A DNA stretch of 64,000 bases, taken from NCBI RefSeq assembly GCF_035594765.1, contig NC_085841.1:264646525-264710524 (forward strand), in the 5' to 3' direction. The DNA is from Anolis carolinensis (Eukaryota). The number at the start of each line of letters is the position of its first letter. Position 1 is the first letter of the stretch. The notes beneath the pieces are model-generated. The model had not been told where the DNA came from, did no database searches, and saw only the letters and a program-made list of their open reading frames with translations. A program made the position numbers and the translations under genes. Positions 1 through 38,500 of the stretch are shown here, piece after piece.

Positions 1-57
1 TGTTGTTTTTTAGTTTTCAACAGACTTTATAGCAGTCCTTGTTCTCTTCTCTTTCAG

Positions 58-11500: not shown

Positions 11501-14500
11501 AGAGGAAGCAAAGAAGGAAAGAGAGAGCCATGTTGCCATGAAGGCATCATAATACTTTATCACAGCTGGAGAAGGGAGAAAGGTGAAGGGAATGAAAGGA
11601 AGGTAAGAGAAAGAAGAAAAAGAAACTGAAAGGAAGGAGAGGAGAGGGAGGGGGGAAAGAAAGAAAGAAAAATGAGGGAAGGAAGTTATAGGAAAGGAGA
11701 AGGGGAGGAAAGAAAGAGAAAGAAAGGATGAAAGCGGGTGGCAGTGGCCTTCTATGACACCTATGCAACAGTAGGGGCTGTGGGGCTGTTTAAGCCTTTC
11801 TCAAGGTGAAGCAAATGATATGTGACTGAGAGTTGTAGTAAATAATATGAAAATAGTGATTTGGCAATGTGAGGGGCAGTCTTGGGAATATTGATTTTCT
11901 TTTACTCTTTGAGTGCAATGGACTTAAAACTAAGTAGGAGAACTACCAGAAATTCATAATCCAGCCCAACAGTCCTTTTGCCAATCTGTGTTCTCTTCCA
12001 ATACAATCTCAGCTCCATTTAACCACAACAGAGCTGCCTTCATGGAGTTCTGAACTGGAAATTCCTTTTCTCTTTAATCACCAAATGGTCACCAACTCAG
12101 GGCTGATCTTGGGCAGGCAGTGCCAGCATTAATTTCTCTTCAATTATGAAAAGCCATATTTCACAAGAGAGGTAAAAAGAAATATGATAAAAGAGAAGCC
12201 AGGTGAAAATTGAGAGGTTTACCTGTAGGGGATTGTGTTGGAACGGTCGCAGTAGTTTTCGTAATTGCTGTTCCACAAGAGTAGAGAAAAAGAATATTGG
12301 TACTCAAGACAAATAAATAAGAAAGCATCCACACTAAAACTGAATCTTATTTTGAGAAAAGTATAAACTGAGCAAATATATGAAAGTCCCCAGGTTTATC
12401 CAACTTACAGGGATTTATCTTCTGTAAGCAGTGTAACGTATACGTATGTTTTGGGGTTTTTTTTCTTCATGTCAGGAGCAACTTGAGAAACTGCTAGTTG
12501 CTTTAGGTGTGAGAGAATTGGCAATCTGCAAGGACATTGCCTAGAGGACAACTAGATGTTTTACCATCATGTGGGAGGCTTCTCTCATGTCCTCACATGA
12601 GGAGCTCCTTGAAACAAATATCTTTAATAGGCATAAAGAGTGAGAATGCAGGCATATACGTTGCACTCTTCTTTCTTGCACTCTCTCTTTTTTCTCAGGA
12701 AAAAAGAAAAAGAAAACTATTTGATGAAATTATTCATTTTGATTCCTTTTTCTCAAAACAATTCACGAATGCAATAGTTCTCAACTTTTGACCCTTCAGT
12801 TATAGCAAAATCAAATATAATCTAGCAAAATTATTTGCTTCTATCTATTTTTATTAGAAAAAATTCTCTAACACAATGGTTTCCAGCCTTTGTACCTCCA
12901 GTCATTTTGGAGTTCAGCTCCCAGAATCTTTAGTAATTCATTGTTATAGCAGAGGAATCTGGAAGCTGAAGTCCAAAATTCTAGCAAAGCAAAGGTTGAA
13001 AACCACTACAACTGATGTCATAGTGGCGTAGTGGTTTCAGCATTGGACTTTGACTCTGTAAACCAGAGTTAAAATTATTGCTTAGCCACAGAAATCTGAG
13101 AGGTCACATGGAATGAATCCCACAAATTCAGGCCCAGAAAACCCTGTGATAGCATAATGACCTTCAAAAGTCACAAAATATACCCCCGCAAAAAAGCAGG
13201 AAGCCGTACCACTAGTAGAGTTGATGGTTGTAGTAGCCATAGTAGTAGAAGGTGGAGCGGAGGTAGTAGGAGCGGTAGATGCAGTAGTTATGGAGGTGAG
13301 TGTACTTAATGGAGAGCTGGTGGTTGTAGAGGTGGCAGTTATAGGCACTGAAAATGTAGGGATACTCGATATGGTTGTCTTAAAGGTGCTGATACTAGTA
13401 GGGAAACTTGAGGTACTGAGACTGATAGTGGTGGTTGCAGTGTGAGTCCCAACTGAAGTAGATTCAACAGAGGTAGGTGCAGAAGTAGTGGTAGGATGTT
13501 GCACAGGCTGAGGAGGAAAGGTTGTAGGTTTTGAAATGGTAAAAGTGGAAGGAGACCAAGTGGATGTAGAAGTGGCCTTTGAGGTGCTTGAAGATAAAGT
13601 AATTTTTGAAGTGGAAGAGACATGAGTACTTGAAGATATTCTTGTACTGCTGACTGTAGAAGTAAAGACAAAAGATAGGGAGATGAAGTCAACAAGAAAG
13701 CAAAATCTACACCATGAGCATGTACACAATATTGGACCATAAAGTTAGTAAAACATTACACAGGTTTTTAGTACAAGGAGGAAAACACATTTCTGGAAAA
13801 CAAAAAAGGCACAAATGTTTTGGAATACGGAGTCGAATACAGGGTTACCCATCTGGGAGGAACAGTGCAGGTGGCCCTCCAGGCTTTAGAAGGAGTCTAA
13901 AAATTTTCAAAACTATCATGAGGGGGGTAGGGACAGAACTCACATCTGACAATTTTGAGTCAGTTGGGAAAACTTACCTGTGGTGGTGACGGGGTGAGTT
14001 GTAGTCGAAGTTGTCGTTGTGGATGGAGGTGTGGTCGTTTCTGTGGTGGTTGGTGTAGTGGTGGTGGGAGTGGTGGTGCTTAGCGGAGTAGTATAGGTGA
14101 CTGTCGGCGTTGGCGTGGAGGAGACGGGTGTGGGTGTCGTCGGTGGCATCGGAGTGACGGTTGGCAAGGGGGTGATGGGTGATATTGTGGTAGTTGGGGT
14201 GTGCGTGCTTGTTGGAGTAGATTTGGTGGAGGTTGTGGTGGGGGTGGTTGGAGTGGTAGGGTGAGAGGTCGATGTGGTGGAGGGAGATGTGGTCCTGGTG
14301 GTGGGTTTGGGTGTTGTGGGGGTTGGGGTTGTCTTTGGCGTGCTGGCCGTGGACGACTCTGTGGACACAGTGGTTTTAGTAGTTGTGGAGGGTGAGGCGG
14401 TTGGTGTTGTTCTGGTTGTGGGGCTGGGAGAAGGCTTTCTTCTGGGTGTGGGGGCTGGAAAAGAAAAGAAAGAGGGAAGAGCTTTGAAGGCTTTGCAATA

Positions 14501-17500
14501 AGAAAGCACGGGCGTAGCAAATTAATAATTCTAACAAAAATAATAAAGATTGAGTCTTCATTTATATACTTTGTTATCTCCGAAAAGAGATTTATGGTGG
14601 TGAACAACAAAGTCAACAAATATTGAGAGTCAGGAAACATTCAAAAGAGAGGCAAATAAGGATACAGGGGACTTCCCTCCTGAGATAGGTCCTTACCTGG
14701 TGGGGTGTGTGTCGTGACGGTGCTGTGGGTTGTTTCTATAAAGGAAGGGGAAAGCGGATAGAAAAGTTAGAGAAACATAGGGGTGGCCATTAAGAAGAGC
14801 CAGGAGTGAGCCCACTGCAGTCCTGAGATGTGGGAGTCTCAGACCAGTTGGGTGAAGGCTGAGGTCCTGCCCGTGTTCCCCATTTGGGAGGAGCAGTGCA
14901 AAAGGCTTTAGAGGGAGTCCAAACGTTTCCAAAAATGTCATTAGGGGAGCAGGACGGGATTCCCATCTGACGGTACTGAATTGGTTGGGAAAACTTACCT
15001 GTGGTGGTGACGGGGTGAGTTGTAGTCGAAGTGGTCGTTGTGGATGGAGGCGTGGTCGTTTCCGTGGTGGTTGGTGTAGTGGTGGTGGGAGTGGTGGTGC
15101 TTAGCGGAGTAGTATAGGTGACTGTCGGCGTTGGCGTGGAGGAGACGGGTGTGGGTGTTGTCGGTGGCATCGGAGTGACGGTTGGCAAGGGGGTGATGGG
15201 CGATATTGTGGTAGTTGGGGTGTGCGTGCTTGTTGGAGTAGATTTGGTGGAGGTTGTGGTGGGGGTGGTTGGAGTGGTAGGGTGAGAGGTTGATGTGGTG
15301 GAGGGAGACGTGGTCTTGGTGGTGGGTTTGGATGTTGTGGGGGTTGGGGTTGTCTTTGGCGTGCTGGCCATGGACTCTGTGGACACAGTGGTTTTAGTAG
15401 TTGTGGAGGGTGAGGCGGTTGGTGTTGTTCTGGTTGTGGGGCTGGGAGAAGGCTTTGTTCTGGGTGTGGGGGCTGGAAAAGAAAAGAAAGAGGGAAGAGC
15501 TTTGAAGGCTTTGCAATAAGAAAGCACGGGCGTAGCAAATTAATAATTCTAACAAAAATAATAAAGATTGAGTCTTCATTTATATACTTTGTTATCTCCG
15601 AAAAGAGATTTATGGTGGTGAACAACAAAGTCAACAAATATTGAGAATCAGGAAACATTCAAAAGAGAGGCAAATAAGGATACAGGGGACTTCCCTCCTG
15701 AGATAGGTCCTTACCTGGTGGGGTGTGTGTCGTGACGGTGCTGTGGGTTGTTTCTATAAAGGATGGGGAAAGCGGATAGAAAAGTTAGAGAAACATAGGG
15801 GTGGCCATTAAGAAGAGCCAGGAGTGAGCCCACTGCAGTCCTGAGATGTGGGAGTCTCAGACCAGTTGGGTGAAGGCTGAGGTCCTGCCCGTGTTCCCCA
15901 TTTGGGAGGAGCAGTGCAAACGGCTTTAGAGGGAGTCCAAATGTTTCCAAAAATGTCATTAGGGGAGCAGGACGGGATTCCCATCTGACGGTAATGAATT
16001 GGTTGGGAAAACTTACCTGTGGTGGTGACGGGGTGAGTTGTAGTCGAAGTGGTCGTTGTGGATGGAGGCGTGGTCGTTTCCGTGGTGGTTGGTGTAGTGG
16101 TGGTGGGAGTGGTGGTGCTTAGCAGAGTAGTATAGGTGACTGTCGGCGTTGGCATGGAGGAGACGGGTGTGGGTGTCGTCGGTGGCATCGGAGTGACGGT
16201 TGGCAAGGGGGTGATGGGCGATATTGTGGTAGTTGGGGTGTGCGTGCTTGTTGGAGTAGATTTGGTGGAGGTTGTGGTGGGGGTGGTTGGAGTGGTAGGG
16301 TGAGAGGTCGATGTGGTGGAGGCAGACGTGGTCTTGGTGGTGGGTTTGGATGTTGTGGGGGTTGGGGTTGTCTTTGGCGTGCTGGCCGTGGACTCTGTGG
16401 ACACAGTGGTTTTAGTAGTTGTGGAGGGTGAGGCGGTTGGTGTTGTTGTGGTTGTGGGGCTGGGAGAAGGCTTTGTTCTGGGTGTGGGGGCTGGAAAAGA
16501 AAAGAAAGAGGGAAGAGCTTTGAAGGCTTTGCAATAAGAAAGCACGGGCGTAGCAAATTAATAATTCTAACAAAAATAATAAAGATTGAGTCTTCATTTA
16601 TATACTTTGTTATCTCCGAAAAGAGATTTATAGTGGTGAACAACAAAGTCAACAAATATTGAGAGTCAGGAAACATTCAAAAGAGAGGCAAATAAGGATA
16701 CAGGGGACCTCCCTCCTGAGATAGGTCCTTACCTGGTGGGGTGTGTGTAGTGACGGTGCTGTGGGTTGTTTCTATAAAGGAAGGGAAAAGCGGATAGAAA
16801 AGTTAGAGAAACGTAGGGGTGGCCATTAAGAAGAGCCAGGAGTGAGCCCACTGCAGTCCTGAGATGTGGGAGTCTCAGACCAGTTGGGTGAAGGCTGAGG
16901 TTCTGCCCGTGTTCCCCATTTGGGAGGAGCAGTGCAAACGGCTTTAGAGGGAGTCCAAATGTTTCCAAAAATGTCATGTGGGGAGCAGGACGGGATTCCC
17001 ATCTGACGGTACTGAATGGGTTGGGAAAACTTACCTGTGGTGGTGACAGGGTGAGTTGTAGTCGAAGTGGTCGTTGTGGATGGAGGCGTGGTCGTTTCCG
17101 TGGTGGTTGGTGTAGTGGTGGTGGGAGTGGTGGTGCTTAGCGGAGTGGTATAGGTGACTGTCGGCGTTGGCGTGGAGGAGACGGGTGTGGGTGTCGTCGG
17201 TGGCATCGGAGTGACGGTTGGCAAGGGGGTGATGGGTGATATTGTGGTAGTTGGGGTGTGCGTGCTTGTTGGAGTAGATTTGGTGGAGGTTGTGGTGGGG
17301 GTGGTTGGAGTGGTAGGGTGAGAGGTCGATGTGGTGGAGGGAGATGTGGTCCTGGTGGTGGGTTTGGGTGTTGTGGGGGTTGGGGTTGTCTTTGGCGTGC
17401 TGGCCGTGGACGACTCTGTGGACACAGTGGTTTTAGTAGTTGTGGAGGGTGAGGCGGTTGGTGTTGTTCTGGTTGTGGGGCTGGGAGAAGGCTTTCTTCT

Positions 17501-20500
17501 GGGTGTGGGGGCTGGAAAAGAAAAGAAAGAGTGAAGAGCTTTGAAGGCTTTGCAATAAGAAAGCACGGGCGTAGCAAATTAATAATTCTAACAAAAATAA
17601 TAAAGATTGAGTCTTCATTTATATACTTTGTTATCTCCGAAAAGAGATTTATGGTGGTGAACAACAAAGTCAACAAATATTGAGAGTCAGGAAACATTCA
17701 AAAGAGAGGCAAATAAGGATACAGGGGACTTCCCTCCTGAGATAGGTCCTTACCTGGTGGGGTGTGTGTCGTGACGGTGCTGTGGGTTGTTTCTATAAAG
17801 AAAGGGAAAAGCGGATAGAAAAGTTAGAGAAACGTAGGGGTGGCCATTAAGAAGAGCCAGGAGTGAGCCCACTGCAGTCCTGAGATGTGGGAGTCTCAGA
17901 CCAGTTGGGTGAAGGCTGAGGTCCTGCCCGTGTTCCCCATTTGGGAGGAGCAGTGCAAACGGCTTTAGAGGGAGTCCAAACGTTTCCAAAAATGTCATGA
18001 GGGGAGCAGGACGGGATTACCATCTGACGGTACTGAATGGGTTGGGAAAACTTACCTGTGGTGGTGACGGGGTGAGTTGTAGTCGACGTGGTCGTTGTGG
18101 ATGGAGGCGTGGTCGTTTCCGTGGTGGTTGGTGTAGTGGTGGTGGGAGTGGTGGTGCTTAGCGGAGTGGTATAGGTGACTGTCGGCGTTGGCGTGGAGGA
18201 GACGGGTGTGGGTGTCGTCGGTGGCATCGGAGTGACGGTTGGCAAGGGGGTGATGGGTGATATTGTGGTAGTTGGGGTGTGCGTGCTTGTTGGAGTAGAT
18301 TTGGTGGAGGTTGTGGTGGGGGTGGTTGGAGTGGTAGGGTGAGAGGTCGATGTGGTGGAGGGAGATGTGGTCCTGGTGGTGGGTTTGGGTGTTGTGGGGG
18401 TTGGGGTTGTCTTTGGCGTGCTGGCCGTGGACGACTCTGTGGACACAGTGGTTTTAGTAGTTGTGGAGGGTGAGGCGGTTGGTGTTGTTCTGGTTGTGGG
18501 GCTGGGAGAAGGCTTTGTTCTGGGTGTGGGGGCTGGAAAAGAAAAGAAAGAGGGAAGAGCTTTGAAGGCTTTGCAATAAGAAAGCACGGGCGTAGCAAAT
18601 TAATAATTCTAACAAAAATAATAAAGATTGAGTCTTCATTTATATACTTTGCTATCTCTGAAAAGAGATTTATAGTGGTGAACAACAAAGTCAACAAATA
18701 TTGAGAGTCAGGAAACATTCAAAAGAGAGGCAAATAAGGATACAGGGGACTTCCCTCCTGAGATAGGTCCTTACCTGGTGGGGTGTGTGTCGTGACGGTG
18801 CTGTGGGTTGTTTCTATAAAGGAAGGGAAAAGCGGATAGAAAAGTTAGAGAAACGTAGGGGTGGCCATTAAGAAGAGCCAGGAGTGAGCCCACTGCAGTC
18901 CTGAGATGTGGGAGTCTCGGACCAGTTGGGTGAAGGCTGAGGTCCTGCCCGTGTTCCCCATTTGGGAGGAGCAGTGCAAACGGCTTTAGAGGGAGTCCAA
19001 ACGTTTCCAAAAATGTCATGAGGGGAGCAGGACGGGATTCCCATCTGACGGTACTGAATGGGTTGGGAAAATTTACCTGTGGTGGTGACAGGGTGAGTTG
19101 TAGTCGAAGTGGTCGTTGTGGATGGAGGCGTGGTCGTTTCCGTGGTGGTTGGTGTAGTGGTGGTGGGAGTGGTGGTGCTTAGCGGAGTGGTATAGGTGAC
19201 TGTCGGTGTTGGCGTGGAGGAGACGGGTGTGGGTGTCGTCGGTGGCATCGGAGTGACGGTTGGCAAGGGGGTGATGGGTGATATTGTGGTAGTTGGGGTG
19301 TGCGTGCTTGTTGGAGTAGATTTGGTGGAGGTCGTGGTGGGGGTGGTTGGAGTGGTAGGGTGAGAGGTCGATGTGGTGGAGGGAGATGTGGTCCTGGTGG
19401 TGGGTTTGGGTGTTGTGGGGGTTGGGGTTGTCTTTGGCGTGCTGGCCGTGGACGACTCTGTGGACACAGTGGTTTTAGTAGTTGTGGAGGGTGAGGCGGT
19501 TGGTGTTGTTCTGGTTGTGGGGCTGGGAGAAGGCTTTCTTCTGGGTGTGGGGGCTGGAAAAGAAAAGAAAGAGTGAAGAGCTTTGAAGGCTTTGCAATAA
19601 GAAAGCACGGGCGTAGCAAATTAATAATTCTAACAAAAATAATAAAGATTGAGTCTTCATTTATATACTTTGTTATCTCCGAAAAGAGATTTATGGTGGT
19701 GAACAACAAAGTCAACAAATATTGAGAGTCAGGAAACATTCAAAAGAGAGGCAAATAAGGATACAGGGGACTTCCCTCCTGAGATAGGTCCTTACCTGGT
19801 GGGGTGTGTGTCGTGACGGTGCTGTGGGTTGTTTCTATAAAGAAAGGGAAAAGCGGATAGAAAAGTTAGAGAAACGTAGGGGTGGCCATTAAGAAGAGCC
19901 AGGAGTGAGCCCACTGCAGTCCTGAGATGTGGGAGTCTCAGACCAGTTGGGTGAAGGCTGAGGTCCTGCCCGTGTTCCCCATTTGGGAGGAGCAGTGCAA
20001 ACGGCTTTAGAGGGAGTCCAAACGTTTCCAAAAATGTCATGAGGGGAGCAGGACGGGATTCCCATCTGACGGTACTGAATGGGTTGGGAAAACTTACCTG
20101 TGGTGGTGATGGGGTGAGTTGTAGTCGACGTGGTCGTTGTGGATGGAGGCGTGGTCGTTTCCGTGGTGGTTGGTGTAGTGGTGGTGGGAGTGGTGGTGCT
20201 TAGCGGAGTGGTATAGGTGACTGTCGGCGTTGGCGTGGAGGAGACGGGTGTGGGTGTCGTCGGTGGCATCGGAGTGACGGTTGGCAAGGGGGTGATGGGT
20301 GATATTGTGGTAGTTGGGGTGTGCGTGCTTGTTGGAGTAGATTTGGTGGAGGTTGTGGTGGGGGTGGTTGGAGTGGTAGGGTGAGAGGTCGATGTGGTGG
20401 AGGGAGATGTGGTCCTGGTGGTGGGTTTGGGTGTTGTGGGGGTTGGGGTTGTCTTTGGCGTGCTGGCCGTGGACGACTCTGTGGACACAGTGGTTTTAGT

Positions 20501-23500
20501 AGTTGTGGAGGGTGAGGCGGTTGGTGTTGTTCTGGTTGTGGGGCTGGGAGAAGGCTTTCTTCTGGGTGTGGGGGCTGGAAAAGAAAAGAAAGAGGGAAGA
20601 GCTTTGAAGGCTTTGCAATAAGAAAGCACGGGCGTAACAAATTAATAGTTCTAACAAAAATAATAAAGATTGAGTCTTCATTTATATACTTTGCTATCTC
20701 TGAAAAGAGATTTATAGTGGTGAACAACAAAGTCAACAAATATTGAGAGTCAGGAAACATTCAAAAGAGAGGCAAATAAGGATACAGGGGACTTCCCTCC
20801 TGAGATAGGTCCTTACCTGGTGGGGTGTGTGTCGTGACGGTGCTGTGGGTTGTTTCTATAAAGGAAGGGAAAAGCGGATAGAAAAGTTAGAGAAACGTAG
20901 GGGTGGCCATTAAGAAGAGCCAGGAGTGAGCCCACTGCAGTCCTGAGATGTGGGAGTCTCGGACCAGTTGGGTGAAGGCTGAGGTCCTGCCCGTGTTCCC
21001 CATTTGGGAGGAGCAGTGCAAACGGCTTTAGAGGGAGTCCAAACGTTTCCAAAAATGTCATGAGGGGAGCAGGACGGGATTCCCATCTGACGGTACTGAA
21101 TGGGTTGGGAAAATTTACCTGTGGTGGTGACGGGGTGAGTTGTAGTCGAAGTGGTCGTTGTGGATGGAGGCGTGGTCGTTTCCGTGGTGGTTGGTGTAGT
21201 GGTGGTGGGAGTGGTGGTGCTTAGCGGAGTGGTATAGGTGACTGTCGGCGTTGGCGTGGAGGAGACGGGTGTGGGTGTCGTCGGTGGCATCGGAGTGACG
21301 GTTGGCAAGGGGGTGATGGGTGATATTGTGGTAGTTGGGGTGTGCGTGCTTGTTGGAGTAGATTTGGTGGAGGTCGTGGTGGGGGTGGTTGGAGTGGTAG
21401 GGTGAGAGGTCGATGTGGTGGAGGGAGATGTGGTCCTGGTGGTGGGTTTGGGTGTTGTGGGGGTTGGGGTTGTCTTTGGCGTGCTGGCCGTGGACGACTC
21501 TGTGGACACAGTGGTTTTAGTAGTTGTGGAGGGTGAGGCGGTTGGTGTTGTTCTGGTTGTGGGGCTGGGAGAAGGCTTTCTTCTGGGTGTGGGGGCTGGA
21601 AAAGAAAAGAAAGAGTGAAGAGCTTTGAAGGCTTTGCAATAAGAAAGCACGGGCGTAGCAAATTAATAATTCTAACAAAAATAATAAAGATTGAGTCTTC
21701 ATTTATATACTTTGTTATCTCCGAAAAGAGATTTATGGTGGTGAACAACAAAGTCAACAAATATTGAGAGTCAGGAAACATTCAAAAGAGAGGCAAATAA
21801 GGATACAGGGGACTTCCCTCCTGAGATAGGTCCTTACCTGGTGGGGTGTGTGTCGTGACGGTGCTGTGGGTTGTTTCTATAAAGGAAGGGAAAAGCGGAT
21901 AGAAAAGTTAGAGAAACGTAGGGGTGGCCATTAAGAAGAGCCAGGAGTGAGCCCACTGCAGTCCTGAGATGTGGGAGTCTCAGACCAGTTGGGTGAAGGC
22001 TGAGGTCCTGCCCGTGTTCCCCATTTGGGAGGAGCAGTGCAAACGGCTTTAGAGGGAGTCCAAACGTTTCCAAAAATGTCCTGAGGGGAGCAGGACGGGA
22101 TTACCATCTGACGGTACTGAATGGGTTGGGAAAACTTACCTGTGGTGGTGACGGGGTGAGTTGTAGTCGACGTGGTCGTTGTGGATGGAGGCGTGGTCGT
22201 TTCCGTGGTGGTTGGTGTAGTGGTGGTGGGAGTGGTGGTGCTTAGCGGAGTGGTATAGGTGACTGTCGGCGTTGGCGTGGAGGAGACGGGTGTGGGTGTC
22301 GTCGGTGGCATCGGAGTGACGGTTGGCAAGGGGGTGATGGGTGATATTGTGGTAGTTGGGGTGTGCGTGCTTGTTGGAGTAGATTTGGTGGAGGTTGTGG
22401 TGGGGGTGGTTGGAGTGGTAGGGTGAGAGGTCGATGTGGTGGAGGGAGATGTGGTCCTGGTGGTGGGTTTGGGTGTTGTGGGGGTTGGGGTTGTCTTTGG
22501 CGTGCTGGCCGTGGACGACTCTGTGGACACAGTGGTTTTAGTAGTTGTGGAGGGTGAGGCGGTTGGTGTTGTTCTGGTTGTGGGGCTGGGAGAAGGCTTT
22601 CTTCTGGGTGTGGGGGCTGGAAAAGAAAAGAAAGAGGGAAGAGCTTTGAAGGCTTTGCAATAAGAAAGCACGGGCGTAGCAAATTAATAATTCTAACAAA
22701 AATAATAAAGATTGAGTCTTCATTTATATACTTTGCTATCTCTGAAAAGAGATTTATAGTGGTGAACAACGAAGTCAACAAATATTGAGAGTCAGGAAAC
22801 ATTCAAAAGAGAGGCAAATAAGGATACAGGGGACTTCCCTCCTGAGATAGGTCCTTACCTGGTGGGGTGTGTGTAGTGACGGTGCTGTGGGTTGTTTCTA
22901 TAAAGGAAGGGGAAAGCGGATAGAAAAGTTAGAGAAACATAGGGGTGGCCATTAAGAAGAGCCAGGAGTGAGCCCACTGCAGTCCTGAGATGTGGGAGTC
23001 TCAGACCAGTTGGGTGAAGGCTGAGGTCCTGCCCGTGTTCCCCATTTGGGAGGAGCAGTGCAAACGGCTTAAGAGGGAGTCCAAACGTTTCCAAAAATGT
23101 CATGAGGGGAGCAGGACGGGATTCCCATCTGACGGTACTGAATGGGTTGGGAAAACTTACCTGTGGTGGTGACGGGGTGAGTTGTAGTCGAAGTGGTCGT
23201 TGTGGATGGAGGCGTGGTTGTTTCCGTGGTGGTTGGTGTAGTGGTGGTGGGAGTGGAGGTGCTTAGCGGAGTGGTATAGGTGACTGTCGGCGTTGGCGTG
23301 GAGGAGACGGGTGTGGGTGTCGTCGGTGGCATCGGAGTGACGGTTGGCAAGGGGGTGATGGGTGATATTGTGGTAGTTGGGGTGTGCGTGCTTGTTGGAG
23401 TAGATTTGGTGGAGGTTGTGGTGGGGGTGGTTGGAGTGGTAGGGTGAGAGGTCGATGTGGTGGAGGGAGATGTGGTCCTGGTGGTGGGTTTGGGTGTTGT

Positions 23501-26500
23501 GGGGGTTGGGGTTGTCTTTGGCGTGCTGGCCGTGGACGACTCTGTGGACACAGTGGTTTTAGTAGTTGTGGAGGGTGAGGCGGTTGGTGTTGTTCTGGTT
23601 GTGGGGCTGGGAGAAGGCTTTCTTCTGGGTGTGGGGGCTGGAAAAGAAAAGAAAGAGGGAAGAGCTTTGAAGGCTTTGCAATAAGAAAGCACGGGCGTAG
23701 CAAATTAATAATTCTAACAAAAATAATAAAGATTGAGTCTTCATTTATATACTTTGCTATCTCTGAAAAGAGATTTATAGTGGTGAACAACAAAGTCAAC
23801 AAATATTGAGAGTCAGGAAACATTCAAAAGAGAGGCAAATAAGGATACAGGGGACTTCCCTCCTGAGATAGGTCCTTACCTGGTGGGGTGTGTGTCGTGA
23901 CGGTGCTGTGGGTTGTTTCTATAAAGGAAGGGAAAAGCGGATAGAAAAGTTAGAGAAACGTAGGGGTGGCCATTAAGAAGAGCCAGGAGTGAGCCCACTG
24001 CAGTCCTGAGATGTGGGAGTCTCGGACCAGTTGGGTGAAGGCTGAGGTCCTGCCCGTGTTCCCCATTTGGGAGGAGCAGTGCAAACGGCTTTAGAGGGAG
24101 TCCAAACGTTTCCAAAAATGTCATGAGGGGAGCAGGACGGGATTCCCATCTGACGGTACTGAATGGGTTGGGAAAATTTACCTGTGGTGGTGACGGGGTG
24201 AGTTGTAGTCGAAGTGGTCGTTGTGGATGGAGGCGTGGTCGTTTCCGTGGTGGTTGGTGTAGTGGTGGTGGGAGTGGTGGTGCTTAGCGGAGTGGTATAG
24301 GTGACTGCCGGTGTTGGCGTGGAGGAGACGGGTGTGGGTGTCGTCGGTGGCATCGGAGTGACGGTTGGCAAGGGGGTGATGGGTGATATTGTGGTAGTTG
24401 GGGTGTGCGTGCTTGTTGGAGTAGATTTGGTGGAGGTCGTGGTGGGGGTGGTTGGAGTGGTAGGGTGAGAGGTCGATGTGGTGGAGGGAGATGTGGTCCT
24501 GGTGGTGGGTTTGGGTGTTGTGGGGGTTGGGGTTGTCTTTGGCGTGCTGGCCGTGGACGACTCTGTGGACACAGTGGTTTTAGTAGTTGTGGAGGGTGAG
24601 GCGGTTGGTGTTGTTCTGGTTGTGGGGCTGGGAGAAGGCTTTCTTCTGGGTGTGGGGGCTGGAAAAGAAAAGAAAGAGTGAAGAGCTTTGAAGGCTTTGC
24701 AATAAGAAAGCACGGGCGTAGCAAATTAATAATTCTAACAAAAATAATAAAGATTGAGTCTTCATTTATATACTTTGTTATCTCCGAAAAGAGATTTATG
24801 GTGGTGAACAACAAAGTCAACAAATATTGAGAGTCAGGAAACATTCAAAAGAGAGGCAAATAAGGATACAGGGGACTTCCCTCCTGAGATAGGTCCTTAC
24901 CTGGTGGGGTGTGTGTCGTGACAGTGCTGTGGGTTGTTTCTATAAAGAAAGGGAAAAGCGGATAGAAAAGTTAGAGAAACGTAGGGGTGGCCATTAAGAA
25001 GAGCCAGGAGTGAGCCCACTGCAGTCCTGAGATGTGGGAGTCTCAGACCAGTTGGGTGAAGGCTGAGGTCCTGCCCGTGTTCCCCATTTGGGAGGAGCAG
25101 TGCAAACGGCTTTAGAGGGAGTCCAAACGTTTCCAAAAATGTCATGAGGGGAGCAGGACGGGATTCCCATCTGACGGTACTGAATGGGTTGGGAAAACTT
25201 ACCTGTGGTGGTGACGGGGTGAGTTGTAGTCGACGTGGTCGTTGTGGATGGAGGCGTGGTCGTTTCCGTGGTGGTTGGTGTAGTGGTGGTGGGAGTGGTG
25301 GTGCTTAGCGGAGTGGTATAGGTGACTGTCGGCGTTGGCGTGGAGGAGACGGGTGTGGGTGTCGTCGGTGGCATCGGAGTGACGGTTGGCAAGGGGGTGA
25401 TGGGTGATATTGTGGTAGTTGGGGTGTGCTTGCTTGTTGGAGTAGATTTGGTGGAGGTTGTGGTGGGGGTGGTTGGAGTGGTAGGGTGAGAGGTCGATGT
25501 GGTGGAGGGAGATGTGGTCCTGGTGGTGGGTTTGGGTGTTGTGGGGGTTGGGGTTGTCTTTGGCGTGCTGGCCGTGGACGACTCTGTGGACACAGTGGTT
25601 TTAGTAGTTGTGGAGGGTGAGGCGGTTGGTGTTGTTCTGGTTGTGGGGCTGGGAGAAGGCTTTGTTCTGGGTGTGGGGGCTGGAAAAGAAAAGAAAGAGG
25701 GAAGAGCTTTGAAGGCTTTGCAAAAAGAAAGCATGGGCGTAGCAAATTAATAATTCTAACAAAAATAATAAAGATTGAGTCTTCATTTATATACTTTGTT
25801 ATCTCCGAAAAGAGATTTATGGTGGTGAACAACAAAGTCAACAAATATTGAGAGTCAGGAAACATTCAAAAGAGAGGCAAATAAGGATACAGGGGACTTC
25901 CCTCCTGAGATAGGTCCTTACCTGGTGGGGTGTGTGTCGTGACGGTGCTGTGGGTTGTTTCTATAAAGGAAGGGGAAAGCGGATAGAAAAGTTAGAGAAA
26001 CGTAGGGGTGGCCATTAAGAAGAGCCAGGAGTGAGCCCACTGCAGTCCTGAGATGTGGGAGTCTCAGACCAGTTGGGTGAAGGCTGAGGTTCTGCCCGTG
26101 TTCCCCATTTGGGAGGAGCAGAGCACACGGCTTTAGAGGGAGTCCAAACGTTTCCAAAAATGTCATGAGGGGAGCAGGACGGGATTCCCATCTGATGGTA
26201 CTGAATGGGTTGGGAAAACTTACCTGTGGTGGTGACGGGGTGAGTTGTAGTCGAAGTGGTCGTTGTGGATGGAGGCGTGGTCGTTTCCGTGGTGGTTGGT
26301 GTAGTGGTGGTGGGAGTGGTGGTGCTTAGCGGAGTAGTATAGGTGACTGTCGGCGTTGGCGTGGAGGAGACGGGTGTGGGTGTCGTCGGTGGCATCGGAG
26401 TGACGGTTGGCAAAGGGGTGATGGGCGATATTGTGGTAGTTGGGGTGTGCGTGCTTGTTGGAGTAGATTTGGTGGAGGTTGTGGTGGGGGTGGTTGGAGT

Positions 26501-29500: not shown

Positions 29501-32500
29501 TAGTTGGGGTGTGCGTACTTGTTGGAGTAGATTTGGTGGAGGTTGTGGTAGGGGTGGTTGGAGTGGTAGGGTGAGAGGTCGATGTGGTGGAGGGAGATGT
29601 GGTCCTGGTGGTGGGTTTGGGTGTTGTGGGGGTTGGGGTTGTCTTTGGCGTGCTGGCCGTGGACGACTCTGTGGACACAGTGGTTTTAGTAGTTGTGGAG
29701 GGTGAGGCGGTTGGTGTTGTTCTGGTTGTGGGGCTGGGAGAAGGCTTTGTTCTGGGTGTGGGGGCTGGAAAAGAAAAGAAAGAGGGAAGAGCTTTGAAGG
29801 CTTTGCAATAAGAAAGCACGGGCATAGCAAATTAATAATTCTAACAAAAACAATAAAGATTGAGTCTTCATTTATATACTTTGTTATCTCCGAAAAGGGA
29901 TTTATGGTGGTGAACAACAAAGTCAACAAATATTGAGAATAAGGAAACATTCAAAAGAGAGGCAAATAAGGATACAGGGGACTTCCCTCCTGAGATAGGT
30001 CCTTACCTGGTGGGGTGTGTGTAGTGACGGTGCTGTGGGTTGTTTCTATAAAGGAAGGGGAAAGCGGATAGAAAAGTTAGAGAAACATAGGGGTGGCCAT
30101 TAAGAAGAGCCAGGAGTGAGCCCACTGCAGTCCTGAGATGTGGGAGTCTCAGACCAGTTGGGTGAAGGCTGAGGTCCTGCCCGTGTTCCCCATTTGGGAG
30201 GAGCAGTGCAAACGGCTTAAGAGGGAGTCCAAACAATTCCAAAAATGTCATGAGGGGAGCAGGACGGGATTCCCATCTGACGGTACTGAATGGGTTGGGA
30301 AAACTTACCTGTGGTGGTGACGGGGTGAGTTGTAGTCGAAGTGGTCGTTGTGGATGGAGGCGTGGTTGTTTCCGTGGTGGTTGGTGTAGTGGTGGTGGGA
30401 GTGGAGGTGCTTAGCGGAGTGGTATAGGTGACTGTCGGCGTTGGCGTGGAGGAGACGGGTGTGGGTGTCGTCGGTGGCATCGGAGTGACGGTTGGCAAGG
30501 GGGTGATGGGCGATATTGTGGTAGTTGGGGTGTGCGTGCTTGTTGGAGTAGATTTGGTGGAGGTTGTGGTGGGGGTGGTTGGAGTGGTAGGGTGAGAGGT
30601 CGATGTGGTGGAGGGAGATGTGGTCCTGGTGGTGGGTTTGGGTGTTGTGGGGGTTGGGGTTGTCTTTGCCGTGCTGGCCGTGGACGACTCTGTGGACACA
30701 GTGGTTTTAGTAGTTGTGGAGGGTGAGGCGGTTGGTGTTGTTCTGGTTGTGGGGCTGGGAGAAGGCTTTGTTCTGGGTGTGGGGGCTGGAAAAGAAAAGA
30801 AAGAGGGAAGAGCTTTGAAGGCTTTGCAATAAGAAAGCACGGGCATAGCAAATTAATAATTCTAACAAAAACAATAAAGATTGAGTCTTCATTTATATAC
30901 TTTGTTATCTCCGAAAAGGGATTTATGGTGGTGAACAACAAAGTCAACAAATATTGAGAATCAGGAAACATTCAAAAGAGAGGCAAATAAGGATACAGGG
31001 GACTTCCCTCCTGAGATAGGTCCTTACCTGGTGTGGTGTGTGTCGTGACGGTGCTGTGGGTTGTTTCTATAAAGGAAGGGAAAAGCGGATAGAAAAGTTA
31101 GAGAAACGTAGGGGTGGCCATTAAGAAGAGCCAGGAGTGAGCCCACTGCAGTCCTGAGATGTGGGATTCTCAGACCAGTTGGGTGAAGGCTGAGGTCCTG
31201 CCCGTGTTCCCCATTTGGGAGGAGCAGTGCAAACGGCTTTAGAGGGAGTCCAAACGTTTCCAAAAATGTCATTAGGGGAGCAGGACGGGATTCCCATCTG
31301 ATGGTACTGAATGGGTTGGGAAAACGTACCTGTGGTGGTGACGGGGTGAGTTGTAGTCGAAGTGGTCATTGTGGATGGAGGCGTGGTCGTTTCCGTGGTG
31401 GTTGGTGTAGTGGTGGTGGGAGTGGTGGCGCTTCGCGGAGTAGTATAGGTGACTGTCGGCGTTGGCGTGGAGGAGACGGGTGTGGGTGTCGTCGGTGGCA
31501 TCGGAGTGACGGTTGGCAAGGGGGTGATGGGCGATATTGTGGTAGTTGGAGTGTGCGTGCTTGTTGGAGTAGATTTGGTGGAGGTTGTGATGGGGGTGGT
31601 TGGAGTGGTAGGGTGAGAGGTCGATGTGGTGGAGGGAGATGTGGTCTTGGTGGTGGGTTTGGGTGTTGTGGGGGTTGGGGTTGTCTTTGGCGTGCTGGCC
31701 GTGGACGACTCTGTGGACACAGTGGTTTTAGTAGTTGTGGAGGGTGAGGCGGTTGGTGTTGTTCTGGTTGTGGGGCTGGGAGAAGGCTTTGTTCTGGGTG
31801 TGGGGGCTGGAAAAGAAAAGAATGAGGGAAGAGCTTTGAAGGCTTTGCAATAAGAAAGCACGGGCATAGCAAATTAATAATTCTAACAAAAATAATAAAG
31901 ATTGAGTCTTCATTTATATACTTTGTTATCTCCGAAAAGGGATTTATGGTGGTGAACAACAAAGTCAACAAATATTGAGAATCAGGAAACATTCAAAAGA
32001 GAGGCAAATAAGGATACAGGGGACTTCCCTCCTGAGATAGGTCCTTACCTGGTGGGGTGTGTGTCGTGACGGTACTGTGGGTTGTTTCTATAAAGGAAGG
32101 AAAAAGCGGATAGAAAAGTTAGAGAAACGTAGGGGTGGCCATTAAGAAGAGCCAGGAGTGAGCCCACTGCAGTCCTGAGATGTGGGAGTCTCAGACCAGT
32201 TGGGTGAAGGCTGAAGTCCTGCCCGTGTTCCCCATTTGGGAGGAGCAGTGCACACGGCTTTAGAGGGAGTCCAAACGTTTCCAAAAATGTCATGAGGGGA
32301 GCAGGACGGGATTCCCATCTGACGGTACTGAATGGGTTGGGAAAACTTACCTGTGGTGGTGACGGGGTGAGTTGTAGTCGAAGTGGTCGTTGTGGATGGA
32401 GGCGTGGTCGTTTCCGTGGTGGTTGGTGTAGTGGTGGTGGGAGTGGTGGTGCTTAGCGGAGTGGTATAGGTGACTGTAGGCGTTGCCGTGGAGGAGACGG

Positions 32501-35500
32501 GTGTGGGTGTCGTCGGTGGCATCGGAGTGACGGTTGGCAAGGGGGTGATGGGCGATATTGTGGTAGTTGGGGTGTGCGTGCTTGTTGGAGTAGATTTGGT
32601 GGAGGTTGTGGTGGGGGTGGTTGGAGTGGTAGGGTGAGAGGTCGATGTGGTGGAGGGAGATGTGGTCCTGGTGGTGGGTTTGGGTGTTGTGGGGGTTGGG
32701 GTTGTCTTTGGCGTGCTGGCCGTGGACGACTCTGTGGACACAGTGGTTTTAGTAGTTGTGGAGGGTGAGGCGGTTGGTGTTGTTCTGGTTGTGGGGCTGG
32801 GAGAAGGCTTTGTTCTGGGTGTGGGGGCTGGAAAAGAAAAGAAAGAGGGAAGAGCTTTGAAGGCTTTGCAATAAGAAAGCACGGGCATAGCAAATTAATA
32901 ATTCTAACAAAAACAATAAAGATTGAGTCTTCATTTATATACTTTGTTATCTCCGAAAAGGGATTTATGGTGGTGAACAACAAAGTCAACAAATATTGAG
33001 AATCAGGAAACATTCAAAAGAGAGGCAAATAAGGATACAGAGGACTTCCCTCCTGAGATAGGTCCTTACCTGGTGTGGTGTGTGTCGTGACGGTGCTGTG
33101 GGTTGTTTCTATAAAGGAAGGGAAAAGCGGATAGAAAAGTTAGAGAAACGTAGGGGTGGCCATTAAGAAGAGCCAGGAGTGAGCCCACTGCAGTCCTGAG
33201 ATGTGGGAGTCTCAGACCAGTTGGGTGAAGGCTGAGGTCCTGCCCGTGTTCCCCATTTGGGAGGAGCAGTGCAAACGGCTTTAGAGGGAGTCCAAACGTT
33301 TCCAAAAATGTCATTAGGGGAGCAGGACGGGATTCCCATCTGATGGTACTGAATGGGTTGGGAAAACGTACCTGTGGTGGTGACGGGGTGAGTTGTAGTC
33401 GAAGTGGTCATTGTGGATGGAGGCGTGGTCGTTTCTGTGGTGGTTGGTGTAGTGGTGGTGGGAGTGGTGGCGCTTCGCGGAGTAGTATAGGTGACTGTCG
33501 GCGTTGGCGTGGAGGAGACGGGTGTGGGTGTCGTCGGTGGCATCGGAGTGACGGTTGGCAAGGGGGTGATGGGCGATATTGTGGTAGTTGGAGTGTGCGT
33601 GCTTGTTGGAGTAGATTTGGTGGAGGTTGTGATGGGGGTGGTTGGAGTGGTAGGGTGAGAGGTCGATGTGGTGGAGGGAGATGTGGTCTTGGTGGTGGGT
33701 TTGGGTGTTGTGGGGGTTGGGGTTGTCTTTGGCGTGCTGGCCGTGGACGACTCTGTGGACACAGTGGTTTTAGTAGTTGTGGAGGGTGAGGCGGTTGGTG
33801 TTGTTCTGGTTGTGGGGCTGGGAGAAGGCTTTGTTCTGGGTGTGGGGGCTGGAAAAGAAAAGAATGAGGGAAGAGCTTTGAAGGCTTTGCAATAAGAAAG
33901 CACGGGCATAGCAAATTAATAATTCTAACAAAAATAATAAAGATTGAGTCTTCATTTATATACTTTGTTATCTCCGAAAAGAGATTTATGGTGGTGAACA
34001 ACAAAGTCAACAAATATTGAGAATCAGGAAACATTCAAAAGAGAGGCAAATAAGGATACAGGGGACTTCCCTCCTGAGATAGGTCCTTACCTGGTGGGGT
34101 GTGTGTCGTGACGGTACTGTGGGTTGTTTCTATAAAGGAAGGAAAAAGCGGATAGAAAAGTTAGAGAAACGTAGGGGTGGCCATTAAGAAGAGCCAGGAG
34201 TGAGCCCACTGCAGTCCTGAGATGTGGGAGTCTCAGACCAGTTGGGTGAAGGCTGAAGTCCTGCCAGTGTTCCCCATTTGGGAGGAGCAGTGCACACGGC
34301 TTTAGAGGGAGTCCAAACGTTTCCAAAAATGTCATGAGGGGAGCAGGACGGGATTCCCATCTGACGGTACTGAATGGGTTGGGAAAACTTACCTGTGGTG
34401 GTGACGGGGTGAGTTGTAGTCGAAGTGGTCGTTGTGGATGGAGGCGTGGTCGTTTCCGTGGTGGTTGGTGTAGTGGTGGTGGGAGTGGTGGTGCTTAGCG
34501 GAGTGGTATAGGTGACTGTAGGCGTTGCCGTGGAGGAGACGGGTGTGGGTGTCGTCGGTGGCATCGGAGTGACGGTTGGCAAGGGGGTGATGGGCGATAT
34601 TGTGGTAGTTGGGGTGTGCGTGCTTGTTGGAGTAGATTTGGTGGAGGTTGTGGTGGGGGTGGTTGGAGTGGTAGGGTGAGAGGTCGATGTGGTGGAGGGA
34701 GATGTGGTCCTGGTGGTGGGTTTGGGTGTTGTGGGGGTTGGGGTTGTCTTTGGCGTGCTGGCCGTGGACGACTCTGTGGACACAGTGGTTTTAGTAGTTG
34801 TGGAGGGTGAGGCGGTTGGTGTTGTTCTGGTTGTGGGGCTGGGAGAAGGCTTTGTTCTGGGTGTGGGGGCTGGAAAAGAAAAGAAAGAGGGAAGAGCTTT
34901 GAAGGCTTTGCAATAAGAAAGCACGGGCATAGCAAATTAATAATTCTAACAAAAACAATAAAGATTGAGTCTTCATTTATATACTTTGTTATCTCCGAAA
35001 AGGGATTTATGGTGGTGAACAACAAAGTCAACAAATATTGAGAATCAGGAAACATTCAAAAGAGAGGCAAATAAGGATACAGAGGACTTCCCTCCTGAGA
35101 TAGGTCCTTACCTGGTGTGGTGTGTGTCGTGACGGTGCTGTGGGTTGTTTCTATAAAGGAAGGGAAAAGCGGATAGAAAAGTTAGAGAAACGTAGGGGTG
35201 GCCATTAAGAAGAGCCAGGAGTGAGCCCACTGCAGTCCTGAGATGTGGGAGTCTCAGACCAGTTGGGTGAAGGCTGAGGTCCTGCCCGTGTTCCCCATTT
35301 GGGAGGAGCAGTGCAAACGGCTTTAGAGGGAGTCCAAACGTTTCCAAAAATGTCATTAGGGGAGCAGGACGGGATTCCCATCTGATGGTACTGAATGGGT
35401 TGGGAAAACTTACCTGTGGTGGTGACGGGGTGAGTTGTAGTCGAAGTGGTCATTGTGGATGGAGGCGTGGTCGTTTCTGTGGTGGTTGGTGTAGTGGTGG

Positions 35501-38500
35501 TGGGAGTGGTGGCGCTTCGCGGAGTAGTATAGGTGACTGTCGGCGTTGGCGTGGAGGAGACGGGTGTGGGTGTCGTCGGTGGCATCGGAGTGACGGTTGG
35601 CAAGGGGGTGATGGGCGATATTGTGGTAGTTGGAGTGTGCGTGCTTGTTGGAGTAGATTTGGTGGAGGTTGTGATGGGGGTGGTTGGAGTGGTAGGGTGA
35701 GAGGTCGATGTGGTGGAGGGAGATGTGGTCTTGGTGGTGGGTTTGGGTGTTGTGGGGGTTGGGGTTGTCTTTGGCGTGCTGGCCGTGGACGACTCTGTGG
35801 ACACAGTGGTTTTAGTAGTTGTGGAGGGTGAGGCGGTTGGTGTTGTTCTGGTTGTGGGGCTGGGAGAAGGCTTTGTTCTGGGTGTGGGGGCTGGAAAAGA
35901 AAAGAATGAGGGAAGAGCTTTGAAGGCTTTGCAATAAGAAAGCACGGGCATAGCAAATTAATAATTCTAACAAAAATAATAAAGATTGAGTCTTCATTTA
36001 TATACTTTGTTATCTCCGAAAAGAGATTTATGGTGGTGAACAACAAAGTCAACAAATATTGAGAATCAGGAAACATTCAAAAGAGAGGCAAATAAGGATA
36101 CAGGGGACTTCCCTCCTGAGATAGGTCCTTACCTGGTGGGGTGTGTGTCGTGACGGTACTGTGGGTTGTTTCTATAAAGGAAGGAAAAAGCGGATAGAAA
36201 AGTTAGAGAAACGTAGGGGTGGCCATTAAGAAGAGCCAGGAGTGAGCCCACTGCAGTCCTGAGATGTGGGAGTCTCAGACCAGTTGGGTGAAGGCTGAAG
36301 TCCTGCCAGTGTTCCCCATTTGGGAGGAGCAGTGCACACGGCTTTAGAGGGAGTCCAAACGTTTCCAAAAATGTCATGAGGGGAGCAGGACGGGATTCCC
36401 ATCTGACGGTACTGAATGGGTTGGGAAAACTTACCTGTGGTGGTGACGGGGTGAGTTGTAGTCGAAGTGGTCGTTGTGGATGGAGGCGTGGTCGTTTCCG
36501 TGGTGGTTGGTGTAGTGGTGGTGGGAGTGGTGGTGCTTAGCGGAGTGGTATAGGTGACTGTAGGCGTTGCCGTGGAGGAGACGGGTGTGGGTGTCGTCAA
36601 TGGCATAGGAGTGACCGTTGGCAAGGGGGTGATGGGCGATATTGTGGTAATTGGGGTGTGCGTGCTTGTTGGAGTAGATTTGGTGGAGGTTGTGGTGGGG
36701 GTGGTTGGAGTGGTAGGGTGAGAGGTCGATGTGGTGGAGGGAGATGTGGTCCTGGTGGTGGGTTTGGGTGTTGTTGGGGTTGGGGTTGTCTTTGGCGTGC
36801 TGGCTGTGGACGATTCTGTGGACACAGTGGATTTAGTAGTTGTGGAGGGTGAGGCGGTTGGTGTTGTTCTGGGTGTGGGACTGGGAGGAGTCTTTGTTCT
36901 GGATGTGGGGCCTGGAAAAGAAAAGAAAGAGCGAAGAGCTTTGAAGGCTTTGCAATAAGAAAGCATGGGAGACGCAAAATAATAAATAAATAAATAAATA
37001 AATAATTGAACTTTATTTATCTACTTTCCTATCTCCCCAAACTGATTCAGGTTGTGAATAACAAAGTCAACAAACATTGAAAGTCAGGAAACTTTCTACA
37101 GAGTGGCAAATCAGGACAAAGGAGACTCTCCTCCCGATACAGGTCTTTACCTGATGGGGTGTGTGTTGTGATTTTGTGGTGGGTTGTTTCTTTATATGAA
37201 CAGAAAAGCAGATCGAAAATGCAGGGTGGCAATAAAGGAGAGCCAGGAATTACCCCACTGCAATCCTGAGATATGGGTATCTCGGGCCAGTTAGGTAAAT
37301 GCTGAGGTCCTGCCCAGGCTCTCAATTTGGAAGGAGCCATGCAGATGGCTTTAGAGAGAGTCCAAACGTTTTCAGAAATATCATGAGTGGGGCAGGGATG
37401 GTATTCCCATCTGACCGTATTGTGTTGTTTGGGAAAACTTACCTGTGGTAGTGACAGGGTGAGTTGTAGCTGAAGTGGTTGTTGTCGATGGAGGCGTGGT
37501 CGTTTCCGTGGTGGTGGGTGATGTGGTGGTGGGAGTGCTGGTGGGTTTAGGTGTTGTGGGGGTGTGGGTTGTCTTTGGCGTGCTGGCCGTGGACAATTCT
37601 GTGGACATAGTGGTTTTTGTGGTTGTAGGGGGTGTCGTGGTTGCTGTTGTTCTCAGTGTGGTGCTTGGAGGAGGCCGTGTTCTGGGTTCCGGTGCTAAAA
37701 ACGACAAAAAAGTTGGAAGAGTGGTGAAGGATGTGAGGTTAGAATTGGAAAATCAAAAGAGAGAGAAGTCAGGCCAAAGAGGACTGACAGATGTCTTTAC
37801 CTGGTGGGCTGTGTGTCGTGATTGTGCTGGTGCTTCGTGTTTTTTCTGCAACGGGAAGAACACAGGAAATTAAATTTAGAAAAATGTGAGGATGGGAATT
37901 AAGCAGAGCCAGGTCTAAACCCGCCTTCCGAAGATGTGGGGGTTTCAGGAAAATTACTTAATTGGCAACTTGCAATGTTAGGAATTAACAAAGTATGTTA
38001 TAAAAATTCTTTAGAAAAGTGCAACATTTTGCCATGCTAACCATTCAAATATGGTTATTTACCAGAAGTGGTCACAATGGTTATTATCTGATGAGATGTA
38101 GTGGATGGAGTAGCAGTCTCTGTAACACTGTGGGTAGAAGTTATTGGAACCGTGCTTGGAGTTGTTTCTGTAGTTGGTGTAGTACTGGACTGAATAATTT
38201 TAGATGTGCTTGAAGTATCTGATTCTGTTGATACAGTAATTCTTGAGGTTGTGGATAGTGAACTGGTTGCTGTTGTTTTCGGTGTGCTTGTGGAATGCCG
38301 TGTTTCTGGAGTAGTTCTAGCTGAAAAAAAAGGCCCAGTGGTTATCTGGACAGTTGTTTGAGAAGGGGAAAGCCAAAAGAAGGTTGGCCAGTTGAACCAT
38401 TTTGTTCATACTTCCAGATTCAAATACTTACGCTGAGATGTTGAGGTTGAGACTACAGTGGTAGTTTGTGTTGCTGTAATAGAAAAATGAAGTATTAAAA

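What the first reader, a model, noticed from the sequence alone, without database searches (positions are those of the whole stretch)
13978..36911. Mucin VNTR built from whole exon-intron cassettes (23 x 1021 bp, two exons per unit)
Seen: the repeat unit is a genomic cassette with a 39-nt micro-exon, a 242-nt intron, a 477-nt exon and a 263-nt intron, with intact splice signals in every copy and introns about as homogeneous as exons. Established: human MUC6, MUC2 and MUC5AC/B encode their PTS repeats within one very large central exon. I recall multi-exon PTS regions being reported for some chicken mucins, so the principle is not unprecedented, but I know of no description of this two-exon cassette array in a squamate MUC6. 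Inference: copy number varies by unequal crossing-over, in frame-safe steps of 172 aa.
Basis: partly seen in the sequence, partly recalled or inferred. Interest (0 to 1): 0.85.

Follow-up and report, generated by a model that had tools for sequence, protein, structure and literature searches.

The report
Lizard MUC6 repeats include their introns
In this lizard the gene for the stomach-type mucin MUC6 builds its long sugar-coated middle from 23 near-identical 1-kb blocks that each contain two exons and two introns; the same layout turns up in every lizard and snake checked, whereas humans and a turtle use one intron-free stretch.

Summary
Observation confirmed to the base: 23 large exons (477 nt; two 474) alternate with 22 micro-exons (39 nt), introns 263/242 nt, all GT-AG, all phase 1-1; one stop-free frame, 81% Thr/Pro/Ser; introns as homogeneous as exons (about 2%). 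The gene is MUC6 (D domains, PTS, cystine knot without VWD4/CysD; best hits MUC6; AP2A2 next door). No two units are identical, there are A/B dimers and recombinants, and an independent public run shows the 1021-bp tandem joint, so it is not an assembly artefact. It is not peculiar to this species: garter snake, Zootoca and Rhineura carry 11-12+ copies of the same two-exon cassette (Phrynosoma: copies either side of a gap); birds use one-exon cassettes (already in RefSeq); a turtle and humans have intronless repeats. Best reading: an ordinary mucin repeat domain whose unit is an exon-intron cassette under concerted evolution. Multi-exon mucin domains (chicken Muc13/MUC2, Xenopus Otogl) and two-exon homogenized cassettes (LPA KIV-2, Argiope MaSp2) are known; I found no paper on squamate MUC6. 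Splice junctions and length polymorphism remain unshown (no usable RNA run). The scan noted this same stretch before, not on other DNA.

The parts
13978..36911 (-). Array: 22 complete 1021-bp cassettes (477-nt exon, 263-nt intron, 39-nt exon, 242-nt intron) plus a final 477-nt exon; 172 aa per unit, 3940 aa in all
36435..36911 (-). First large exon (477 nt, phase 1-1), its 5' part the most diverged
36172..36434 (-). Example of the 263-nt intron (large exon to micro-exon)
36133..36171 (-). Example of the 39-nt micro-exon (phase 1-1)
35891..36132 (-). Example of the 242-nt intron (micro-exon to large exon)
30786..35890 (-). Units 2-6: alternating A/B dimer (every second unit 1-4 nt apart, neighbours 20-23 apart)
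17512..25679 (-). Units 12-19: second family of two alternating types (2-6 nt within type, 12-14 between)
36912..37845 (-). Older cassette copy outside the homogenized zone: exons 37845-37801, 37694-37443, 37189-37151; exons and the two nearest introns 79-85% identical to the array consensus
38063..41680 (-). Upstream PTS exons 41680-41633, 38473-38432, 38320-38063, all phase 1-1; still older short+long pair
7972..13653 (-). Downstream PTS exons 13653-13210, 12267-12223, 8058-7972, phase 1-1
5411..6948 (-). Two cystine-knot exons (6948-6846, 5591-stop at 5411); best hits are MUC6 proteins
42901..62819 (-). 14 exons of the D2-end/D'/D3 assembly (VWD, C8, TIL); exon sizes match bird MUC6 exon for exon
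52..280 (+). Stretch 74% alike to the 3' end of AP2A2 in the garter-snake locus, tail to tail with MUC6

Best explanation
This is the MUC6 gene of an iguanian lizard. Its heavily O-glycosylated Pro/Thr/Ser domain is encoded by a tandem array whose unit of duplication is a whole genomic cassette of two phase-1 exons and two introns. Misaligned recombination between units (unequal crossing-over and/or gene conversion) adds, removes and homogenizes cassettes with their introns; since the exons are symmetric, any in-register exchange keeps the frame and changes the protein by 172 aa. Splicing removes the 44 introns to give a roughly 5600-aa mucin, much like human MUC6 (24 x 169 aa, 5534 aa). The layout (about 45-nt micro-exon, short intron, about 450-nt exon, 260-310-nt intron) is old in squamates and is kept while the sequence is replaced lineage by lineage (concerted evolution). 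Shown: anatomy, open frame, gene identity, homogenization, recombination signal, presence in other squamates. Inferred: splicing as modelled, O-glycosylation, present-day length polymorphism, tissue.
For: Anatomy and frame. Identity. Variants shared across exon and intron boundaries, A/B dimers, chimeric units (1/9, 7/14), similarity falling with distance (Mantel rho 0.42, p 2e-4). Four-gamete conflicts 5% for sites under 100 nt apart against 22% over 400 nt. Older 80% copy at the edge. Same two-exon cassette in Thamnophis (12 copies, 99.4-100% alike), Rhineura (11 or more, 96-98%), Zootoca (12 or more micro-exons, 95-99%), Phrynosoma (copies both sides of a gap), always stop-free in phase 1, while most between-species intron comparisons are at shuffle level. 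All 16 length variants of large exons seen (474, 273, 423, 441, 447/456) are multiples of 3 whereas intron lengths vary freely. Independent contig with the 1021-bp joint.
Against: No splice-junction evidence was obtained (contigs only, genomic-looking). Protein-level constraint inside the array is weak: nonsynonymous/synonymous 0.48 (p 0.005) falls to 0.56, not significant, once CpG sites are set aside, and nonsynonymous changes are not significantly rarer than intronic ones. The snake micro-exon is not Thr/Pro/Ser-rich and one copy is 46 nt. One haplotype only, so 'variable number' is untested.
Confidence: 0.85

Rival explanations
1. The same array, but its point is splice-tunable length: cassettes or micro-exons are skipped in regulated fashion, so one animal makes a ladder of MUC6 lengths.
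For: All 54 PTS exons are phase 1-1. Zebra-finch RefSeq isoforms carry 8, 6 or 5 of the 444-nt exons. The idea was proposed for chicken Muc13 (PMC1552070); Xenopus FIM-C.1 is called polymorphic through alternative splicing (PMC7177656).
Against: Symmetric phase is also required for frame-safe duplication, so it does not discriminate. RefSeq isoforms over near-identical exons may be read-mapping artefacts. Splice sites are near consensus and near identical in all copies, giving no obvious handle for regulation. No RNA evidence here.
Confidence: 0.2
2. The micro-exon is not used: each unit has one 477-nt exon and one 544-nt intron, as in the one-exon bird cassettes.
For: Skipping keeps the frame; no junction reads; birds have one exon per unit; the snake version is not PTS-rich.
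Against: A 39-45-nt stop-free phase-1 segment with pyrimidine tract, AG and GT sits at the same place in five squamate lineages whose intron sequences mostly no longer align; comparable 42-48-nt exons are annotated upstream of the bird arrays.
Confidence: 0.1
3. The array is an assembly expansion of a few real copies.
For: Long near-identical repeats are error-prone to assemble; exact copy number was not verified with spanning reads.
Against: No two of 22 units are identical, 64 variants are shared in a nested pattern; three public runs from three studies show array contigs far deeper than the single-copy flank and one shows the 1021-bp joint (depth is not a copy number); other species' independent assemblies hold similar arrays.
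Confidence: 0.04

Closest known systems
Human MUC6 (PMC6269512, PMC9712336)
   Same: Orthologue; long-unit PTS repeat of similar size and number (169 aa x 24, 5534 aa, against 172 aa x 23, about 5600 aa); no CysD; varies by loss or duplication of units.
   Different: Human repeats lie in one 12-13 kb exon (exon 31); here every unit has two exons and two introns.
Bird MUC6 in RefSeq (zebra finch, pigeon)
   Same: PTS domain split into phase 1-1 exons with a tandem run of 441-447-nt exons at about 0.95-1.5 kb period.
   Different: One exon per unit, 8-9 units; zebra-finch introns only 76% alike against 96% for exons, though a pigeon sub-array has 99.6% alike introns.
Chicken Muc13 and MUC2, Xenopus Otogl/MucXS (PMC1552070, PMC3549977, PMC5789918)
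   Same: Mucin domain encoded by many exons; in Muc13 one exon per repeat; chicken MUC2 repeats span exons 32-45 with repeated flanking DNA.
   Different: Other mucin genes; shorter repeats (20 and 69 aa); no two-exon homogenized 1-kb cassette described.
LPA kringle IV type 2 copy-number repeat (PMC6314250)
   Same: Coding tandem repeat whose unit is two exons plus introns, 1 to over 40 copies per allele, changing protein length.
   Different: 5.6-kb unit encoding a folded kringle; length polymorphism is proven there, inferred here.
Argiope MaSp2 and flagelliform spidroin genes (PMC9779670)
   Same: Core unit of two exons and two alternating intron types, introns 94-99.7% homogenized within a gene and diverging fast between genes; authors knew of no other gene with two alternating homogenized introns.
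   Different: Spider silk; arose within a genus, whereas this layout is shared across distant squamate families.

Membership tests
MUC6 (gel-forming mucin) | N-terminal VWD-C8-TIL assemblies | tested here: met
   Exon-by-exon Pfam hits VWD, C8, TIL; D3 exon matches mucin structures; only D2 end to D3 lie in the window
MUC6 (gel-forming mucin) | No fourth VWD and no CysD; PTS followed directly by cystine knot | tested here: met
   54 PTS exons with 0 Cys, then two CK exons and the stop; criterion from PMC4948705, PMC6269512
MUC6 (gel-forming mucin) | Best sequence hits are MUC6 orthologues | tested here: met
   Last exon: Phrynosoma 74%, then bird, alligator, snake, mammal mucin-6; exon sizes equal to bird MUC6
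MUC6 (gel-forming mucin) | Synteny: AP2A2 downstream, MUC2 head to head upstream | tested here: inconclusive
   AP2A2 side supported through the snake locus; the 5' end and MUC2 lie outside the window
MUC6 (gel-forming mucin) | Expressed, secreted, O-glycosylated in gastric/oviduct glands | not testable with these tools
   No RNA holder on record; laid runs looked genomic
Exon-intron cassette coding repeat (LPA KIV-2 / MaSp2 type) | Unit includes introns, homogenized within the gene | tested here: met
   Intron difference 2.1-2.2% against exon 1.8-2.6%
Exon-intron cassette coding repeat (LPA KIV-2 / MaSp2 type) | Frame kept on gain or loss of a unit | tested here: met
   All exons phase 1-1, 516 nt per unit
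Exon-intron cassette coding repeat (LPA KIV-2 / MaSp2 type) | Signature of unequal exchange / concerted evolution | tested here: met
   Dimers, chimeras, distance decay, four-gamete gradient; within-species 95-100% against 63-78% between species for large exons
Exon-intron cassette coding repeat (LPA KIV-2 / MaSp2 type) | Copy number differs between alleles or individuals (true VNTR) | tested here: inconclusive
   Contig depths are not copy numbers; counts differ between species only
Exon-intron cassette coding repeat (LPA KIV-2 / MaSp2 type) | Junctions spliced in mRNA | tested here: inconclusive
   No splice joint among those listed, but the runs were genomic-looking contigs and 172 joints were not shown
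Mammal-type mucin VNTR | Repeats within one large exon | tested here: not met
   Introns with stops in every unit; unit length not a multiple of 3

The most novel reading that the evidence does not exclude
MUC6 has switched between intronless (mammals, pig-nosed turtle), one-exon (birds) and two-exon (squamates) repeat units, with dozens of introns gained or lost at once through concerted evolution, and the squamate layout has been kept because skipping of symmetric cassettes lets one animal tune the length of its gel-forming mucin.
Probability: 0.2. Interest if true: 0.68.

Novelty: new variant of a known kind. Interest (0 to 1): 0.46.

Why it matters
Reviews treat the single giant exon as the rule for MUC6 and its cluster mates; here the same gene reaches the same protein size by three different gene layouts across amniotes, a natural experiment on mass intron gain or loss by concerted evolution and on whether mucin length can be set by splicing (proposed in 2006 for chicken Muc13; I found no test of it in the papers searched). 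Practically, the RefSeq models examined for Thamnophis, Zootoca and Rhineura break or stop at this array, so squamate MUC6 is misannotated as short or split proteins; the cassette model repairs that annotation problem. It is a second-kingdom-branch parallel to the alternating homogenized introns of Argiope MaSp2.

Tried and rejected
Tandem Repeats Finder misses the 1021-bp period (limit 500). Read-through of the introns rejected (stops, length not a multiple of 3). MUC2/MUC5/ovomucin rejected: no CysD, no VWD4, long PTS, MUC6 best hits (the D3 exon hits MUC2 first in the structure bank only because no MUC6 chain appeared; CK exon no hit). Purifying selection in the array: signal not significant after CpG control. 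RNA junction test: the single run search gave no holder on record as RNA and the single lay gave genomic-looking contigs dominated by interspersed repeats. Loci for chicken, alligator and Kemp's ridley MUC6 were not on record; the snake C-terminal query found only itself; Lang 2007 was not held; literature searches for squamate/lizard MUC6 gene structure found nothing relevant. The spliced model was searched exon by exon by reference; the joined protein was not searched or folded. N gaps in the Phrynosoma and opossum loci were left unfilled. First-pass boundaries for snake, Rhineura and Zootoca were off by one base and corrected.
Full report
Observation. The array is real and exactly as described. 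A k-mer scan gives a 1021-bp period from about 13,980 to 36,900. On the minus strand there are 23 large exons (477 nt; units 21 and 22 have a shared 3-nt deletion, 474) and 22 micro-exons (39 nt), separated by 263-nt (once 264) and 242-nt introns, all GT..AG. The array exons joined in a script give one frame without a stop over 3940 codons (Thr 47.7%, Pro 20.6%, Ser 12.9%); the other frames have 23-25 stops, both introns contain in-frame stops and the unit length is not a multiple of three, so the stretch can only code if spliced. Mean pairwise differences are 1.8% (large exon), 2.6% (micro-exon), 2.1% and 2.2% (introns). The unit has no Cys and no N-glycosylation sequon.

Gene identity. Seventy exons between 62,819 and 5,411 form one open frame of 5120 aa ending in a stop after the cystine knot; the 54 Cys-free PTS exons (41,680 to 7,972) are all phase 1-1. 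Searched exon by exon, by reference (the joined model was not searched), the upstream exons hit VWD, C8 and TIL and the downstream one Cys_knot weakly. The last exon's best hits among 1.8 billion representatives are MUC6 proteins of Phrynosoma (74%), birds, alligator, garter snake and mammals. Exon sizes upstream of the PTS match bird MUC6 one for one. There is no fourth VWD or CysD, as expected for Muc6 (PMC4948705). The window's first 300 bases match the 3' end of AP2A2 in the snake locus. Introns align with Phrynosoma at 65-80%, so the animal is an iguanian lizard; an anole is my guess, not tested. Adding the roughly 530 aa outside the window gives about 5600 aa, close to human MUC6 (5534 aa, 24 units of 169 aa in one exon; PMC6269512).

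How the array evolves. No two of 22 complete units are identical (1-38 differences, mean 20); 64 shared variants run across exon-intron boundaries, units 2-6 and 12-19 form two separate families of alternating types, units 1/9 and 7/14 share only part of their length, and similarity falls with distance (Mantel rho 0.42, p 2e-4). Four-gamete conflicts rise from 5% for close sites to 22% for distant ones. This is what unequal crossing-over and conversion of whole cassettes leave behind. At the 5' edge lies an older copy, 79-85% alike in exons and introns alike, and beyond it a more decayed short+long pair. Constraint on the protein is weak: 26 synonymous and 28 nonsynonymous variants (ratio per site 0.48, p 0.005), not significant after excluding CpG changes (0.56, p 0.18); no nonsense or frameshift variant occurs.

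Is it an artefact? Twenty public runs from seven studies hold the stretch. Of four laid, a 2023 run has a 922-bp contig that continues from one unit into the next (joint 'goes back 1021') at depth 389 against 30-60 on the flank, and two older runs also show array contigs far deeper than the flank. The tool warns that such depth is no copy number, and the 2023 run could be related to the assembly sample, so the count of 23 and its variation remain unverified, but multi-copy status is supported. No splice joint was listed; the contigs run through introns, so the RNA test is inconclusive.

Other species. Garter snake: 12 cassettes of about 906 bp (45-nt micro-exon, 110-nt intron, 447-nt exon, 290-308-nt intron), 99.4-100% alike, stop-free in phase 1. 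Rhineura: at least 11 (45, 107, 462, 273) and Zootoca at least 11-12 (45, 104, 447/456, 273), 95-99% alike in all parts, both cut by the end of the fetched locus. Phrynosoma: 45-nt micro-exon and 112-nt intron on both sides of an assembly gap, left unfilled. Large exons are 63-78% alike between species; introns mostly not above shuffles except Rhineura-Zootoca. Their database models stop at, or are split by, the array. Birds: zebra-finch RefSeq MUC6 has 15 phase 1-1 PTS exons including eight of 444-447 nt at about 960-bp period, exons 96% but introns 76% alike; pigeon is similar with a recent 1509-bp sub-array whose introns are 99.6% alike. Pig-nosed turtle: an 864-bp repeat, 98.7% alike, within a stop-free frame of over 3000 codons, so intronless. 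An opossum model has one 1547-nt PTS exon. The two-exon cassette is thus shared by iguanians, a snake and lacertoids, lineages that split well over 100 million years ago (own knowledge); geckos, skinks, tuatara and crocodilians were not sampled, so gain against loss cannot be polarized.

What is known. Single-exon PTS in human MUC2/5AC/5B/6 (PMC9712336). Multi-exon PTS in chicken Muc13, with the suggestion of splice-controlled length (PMC1552070), chicken MUC2 (PMC3549977) and Xenopus Otogl (PMC5789918). Two-exon cassette arrays: LPA KIV-2 (PMC6314250) and Argiope MaSp2 (PMC9779670). Searches found no description of squamate or bird MUC6 PTS gene structure; the library lacks most subscription papers.

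Verdict. A genuine MUC6 whose repeat unit is a two-exon, two-intron cassette under concerted evolution: a new variant of known kinds, apparently undescribed for this gene, general among the squamates sampled rather than unique to this genome. Splicing and polymorphism are inferred. Interest 0.46.

Noticed in passing
L009 77753-86863 (Carettochelys): Turtle MUC6 repeat is intronless: 864-bp (288-aa) units, 98.7% alike, stop-free over 3037 codons to the locus end; the database model stops before it.
   Followed up: partly
L003 33348-40510 (zebra finch); L005 47631-52601 (pigeon): In zebra finch the array exons are 96% alike but introns only 76%, suggesting exon-limited homogenization or older duplications; a pigeon sub-array shows the reverse (introns 99.6%, exons 97%).
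   Followed up: partly
L003 (P0034-P0041): Zebra-finch and Hawaiian-crow RefSeq list about 20 MUC6 isoforms; two mapped finch isoforms differ by whole 444-nt exons (8, 6, 5 copies).
   Followed up: partly
L004 1-24311; L007; L008: Squamate MUC6 database models are split in three (Thamnophis) or truncated at about 1450 aa (Rhineura, Zootoca) at the array.
   Followed up: yes
window 35770-38774: Runs X1 and X3 (256 and 325 million letters of contigs, guessed RNA) cover introns and exons without joints, with uneven depth (one intron type about 1100, the other about 120 in X1); library type unexplained.
   Followed up: no
window 35891-36132: The micro-to-large intron is 242 nt here but 104-112 nt in the four other squamates and 106-111 nt in the two oldest upstream pairs, so it lengthened before the present array expanded.
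   Followed up: partly
L004 6286-6331: First snake micro-exon copy is 46 nt (frame-breaking or a sequence error); the snake micro-exon peptide is not Thr/Pro/Ser-rich.
   Followed up: no
window 55635-55807; 38740-38860; 41088-41436; 52300-52670; 58050-58360: A 60-61-bp minisatellite and several copies of abundant interspersed repeats in MUC6 introns.
   Followed up: no
L007 88288-97523 and 98000-106000: Rhineura MUC6 has a 9-kb intron before the PTS region and dispersed older cassette copies 1.9 and 6.8 kb apart upstream of its array.
   Followed up: no
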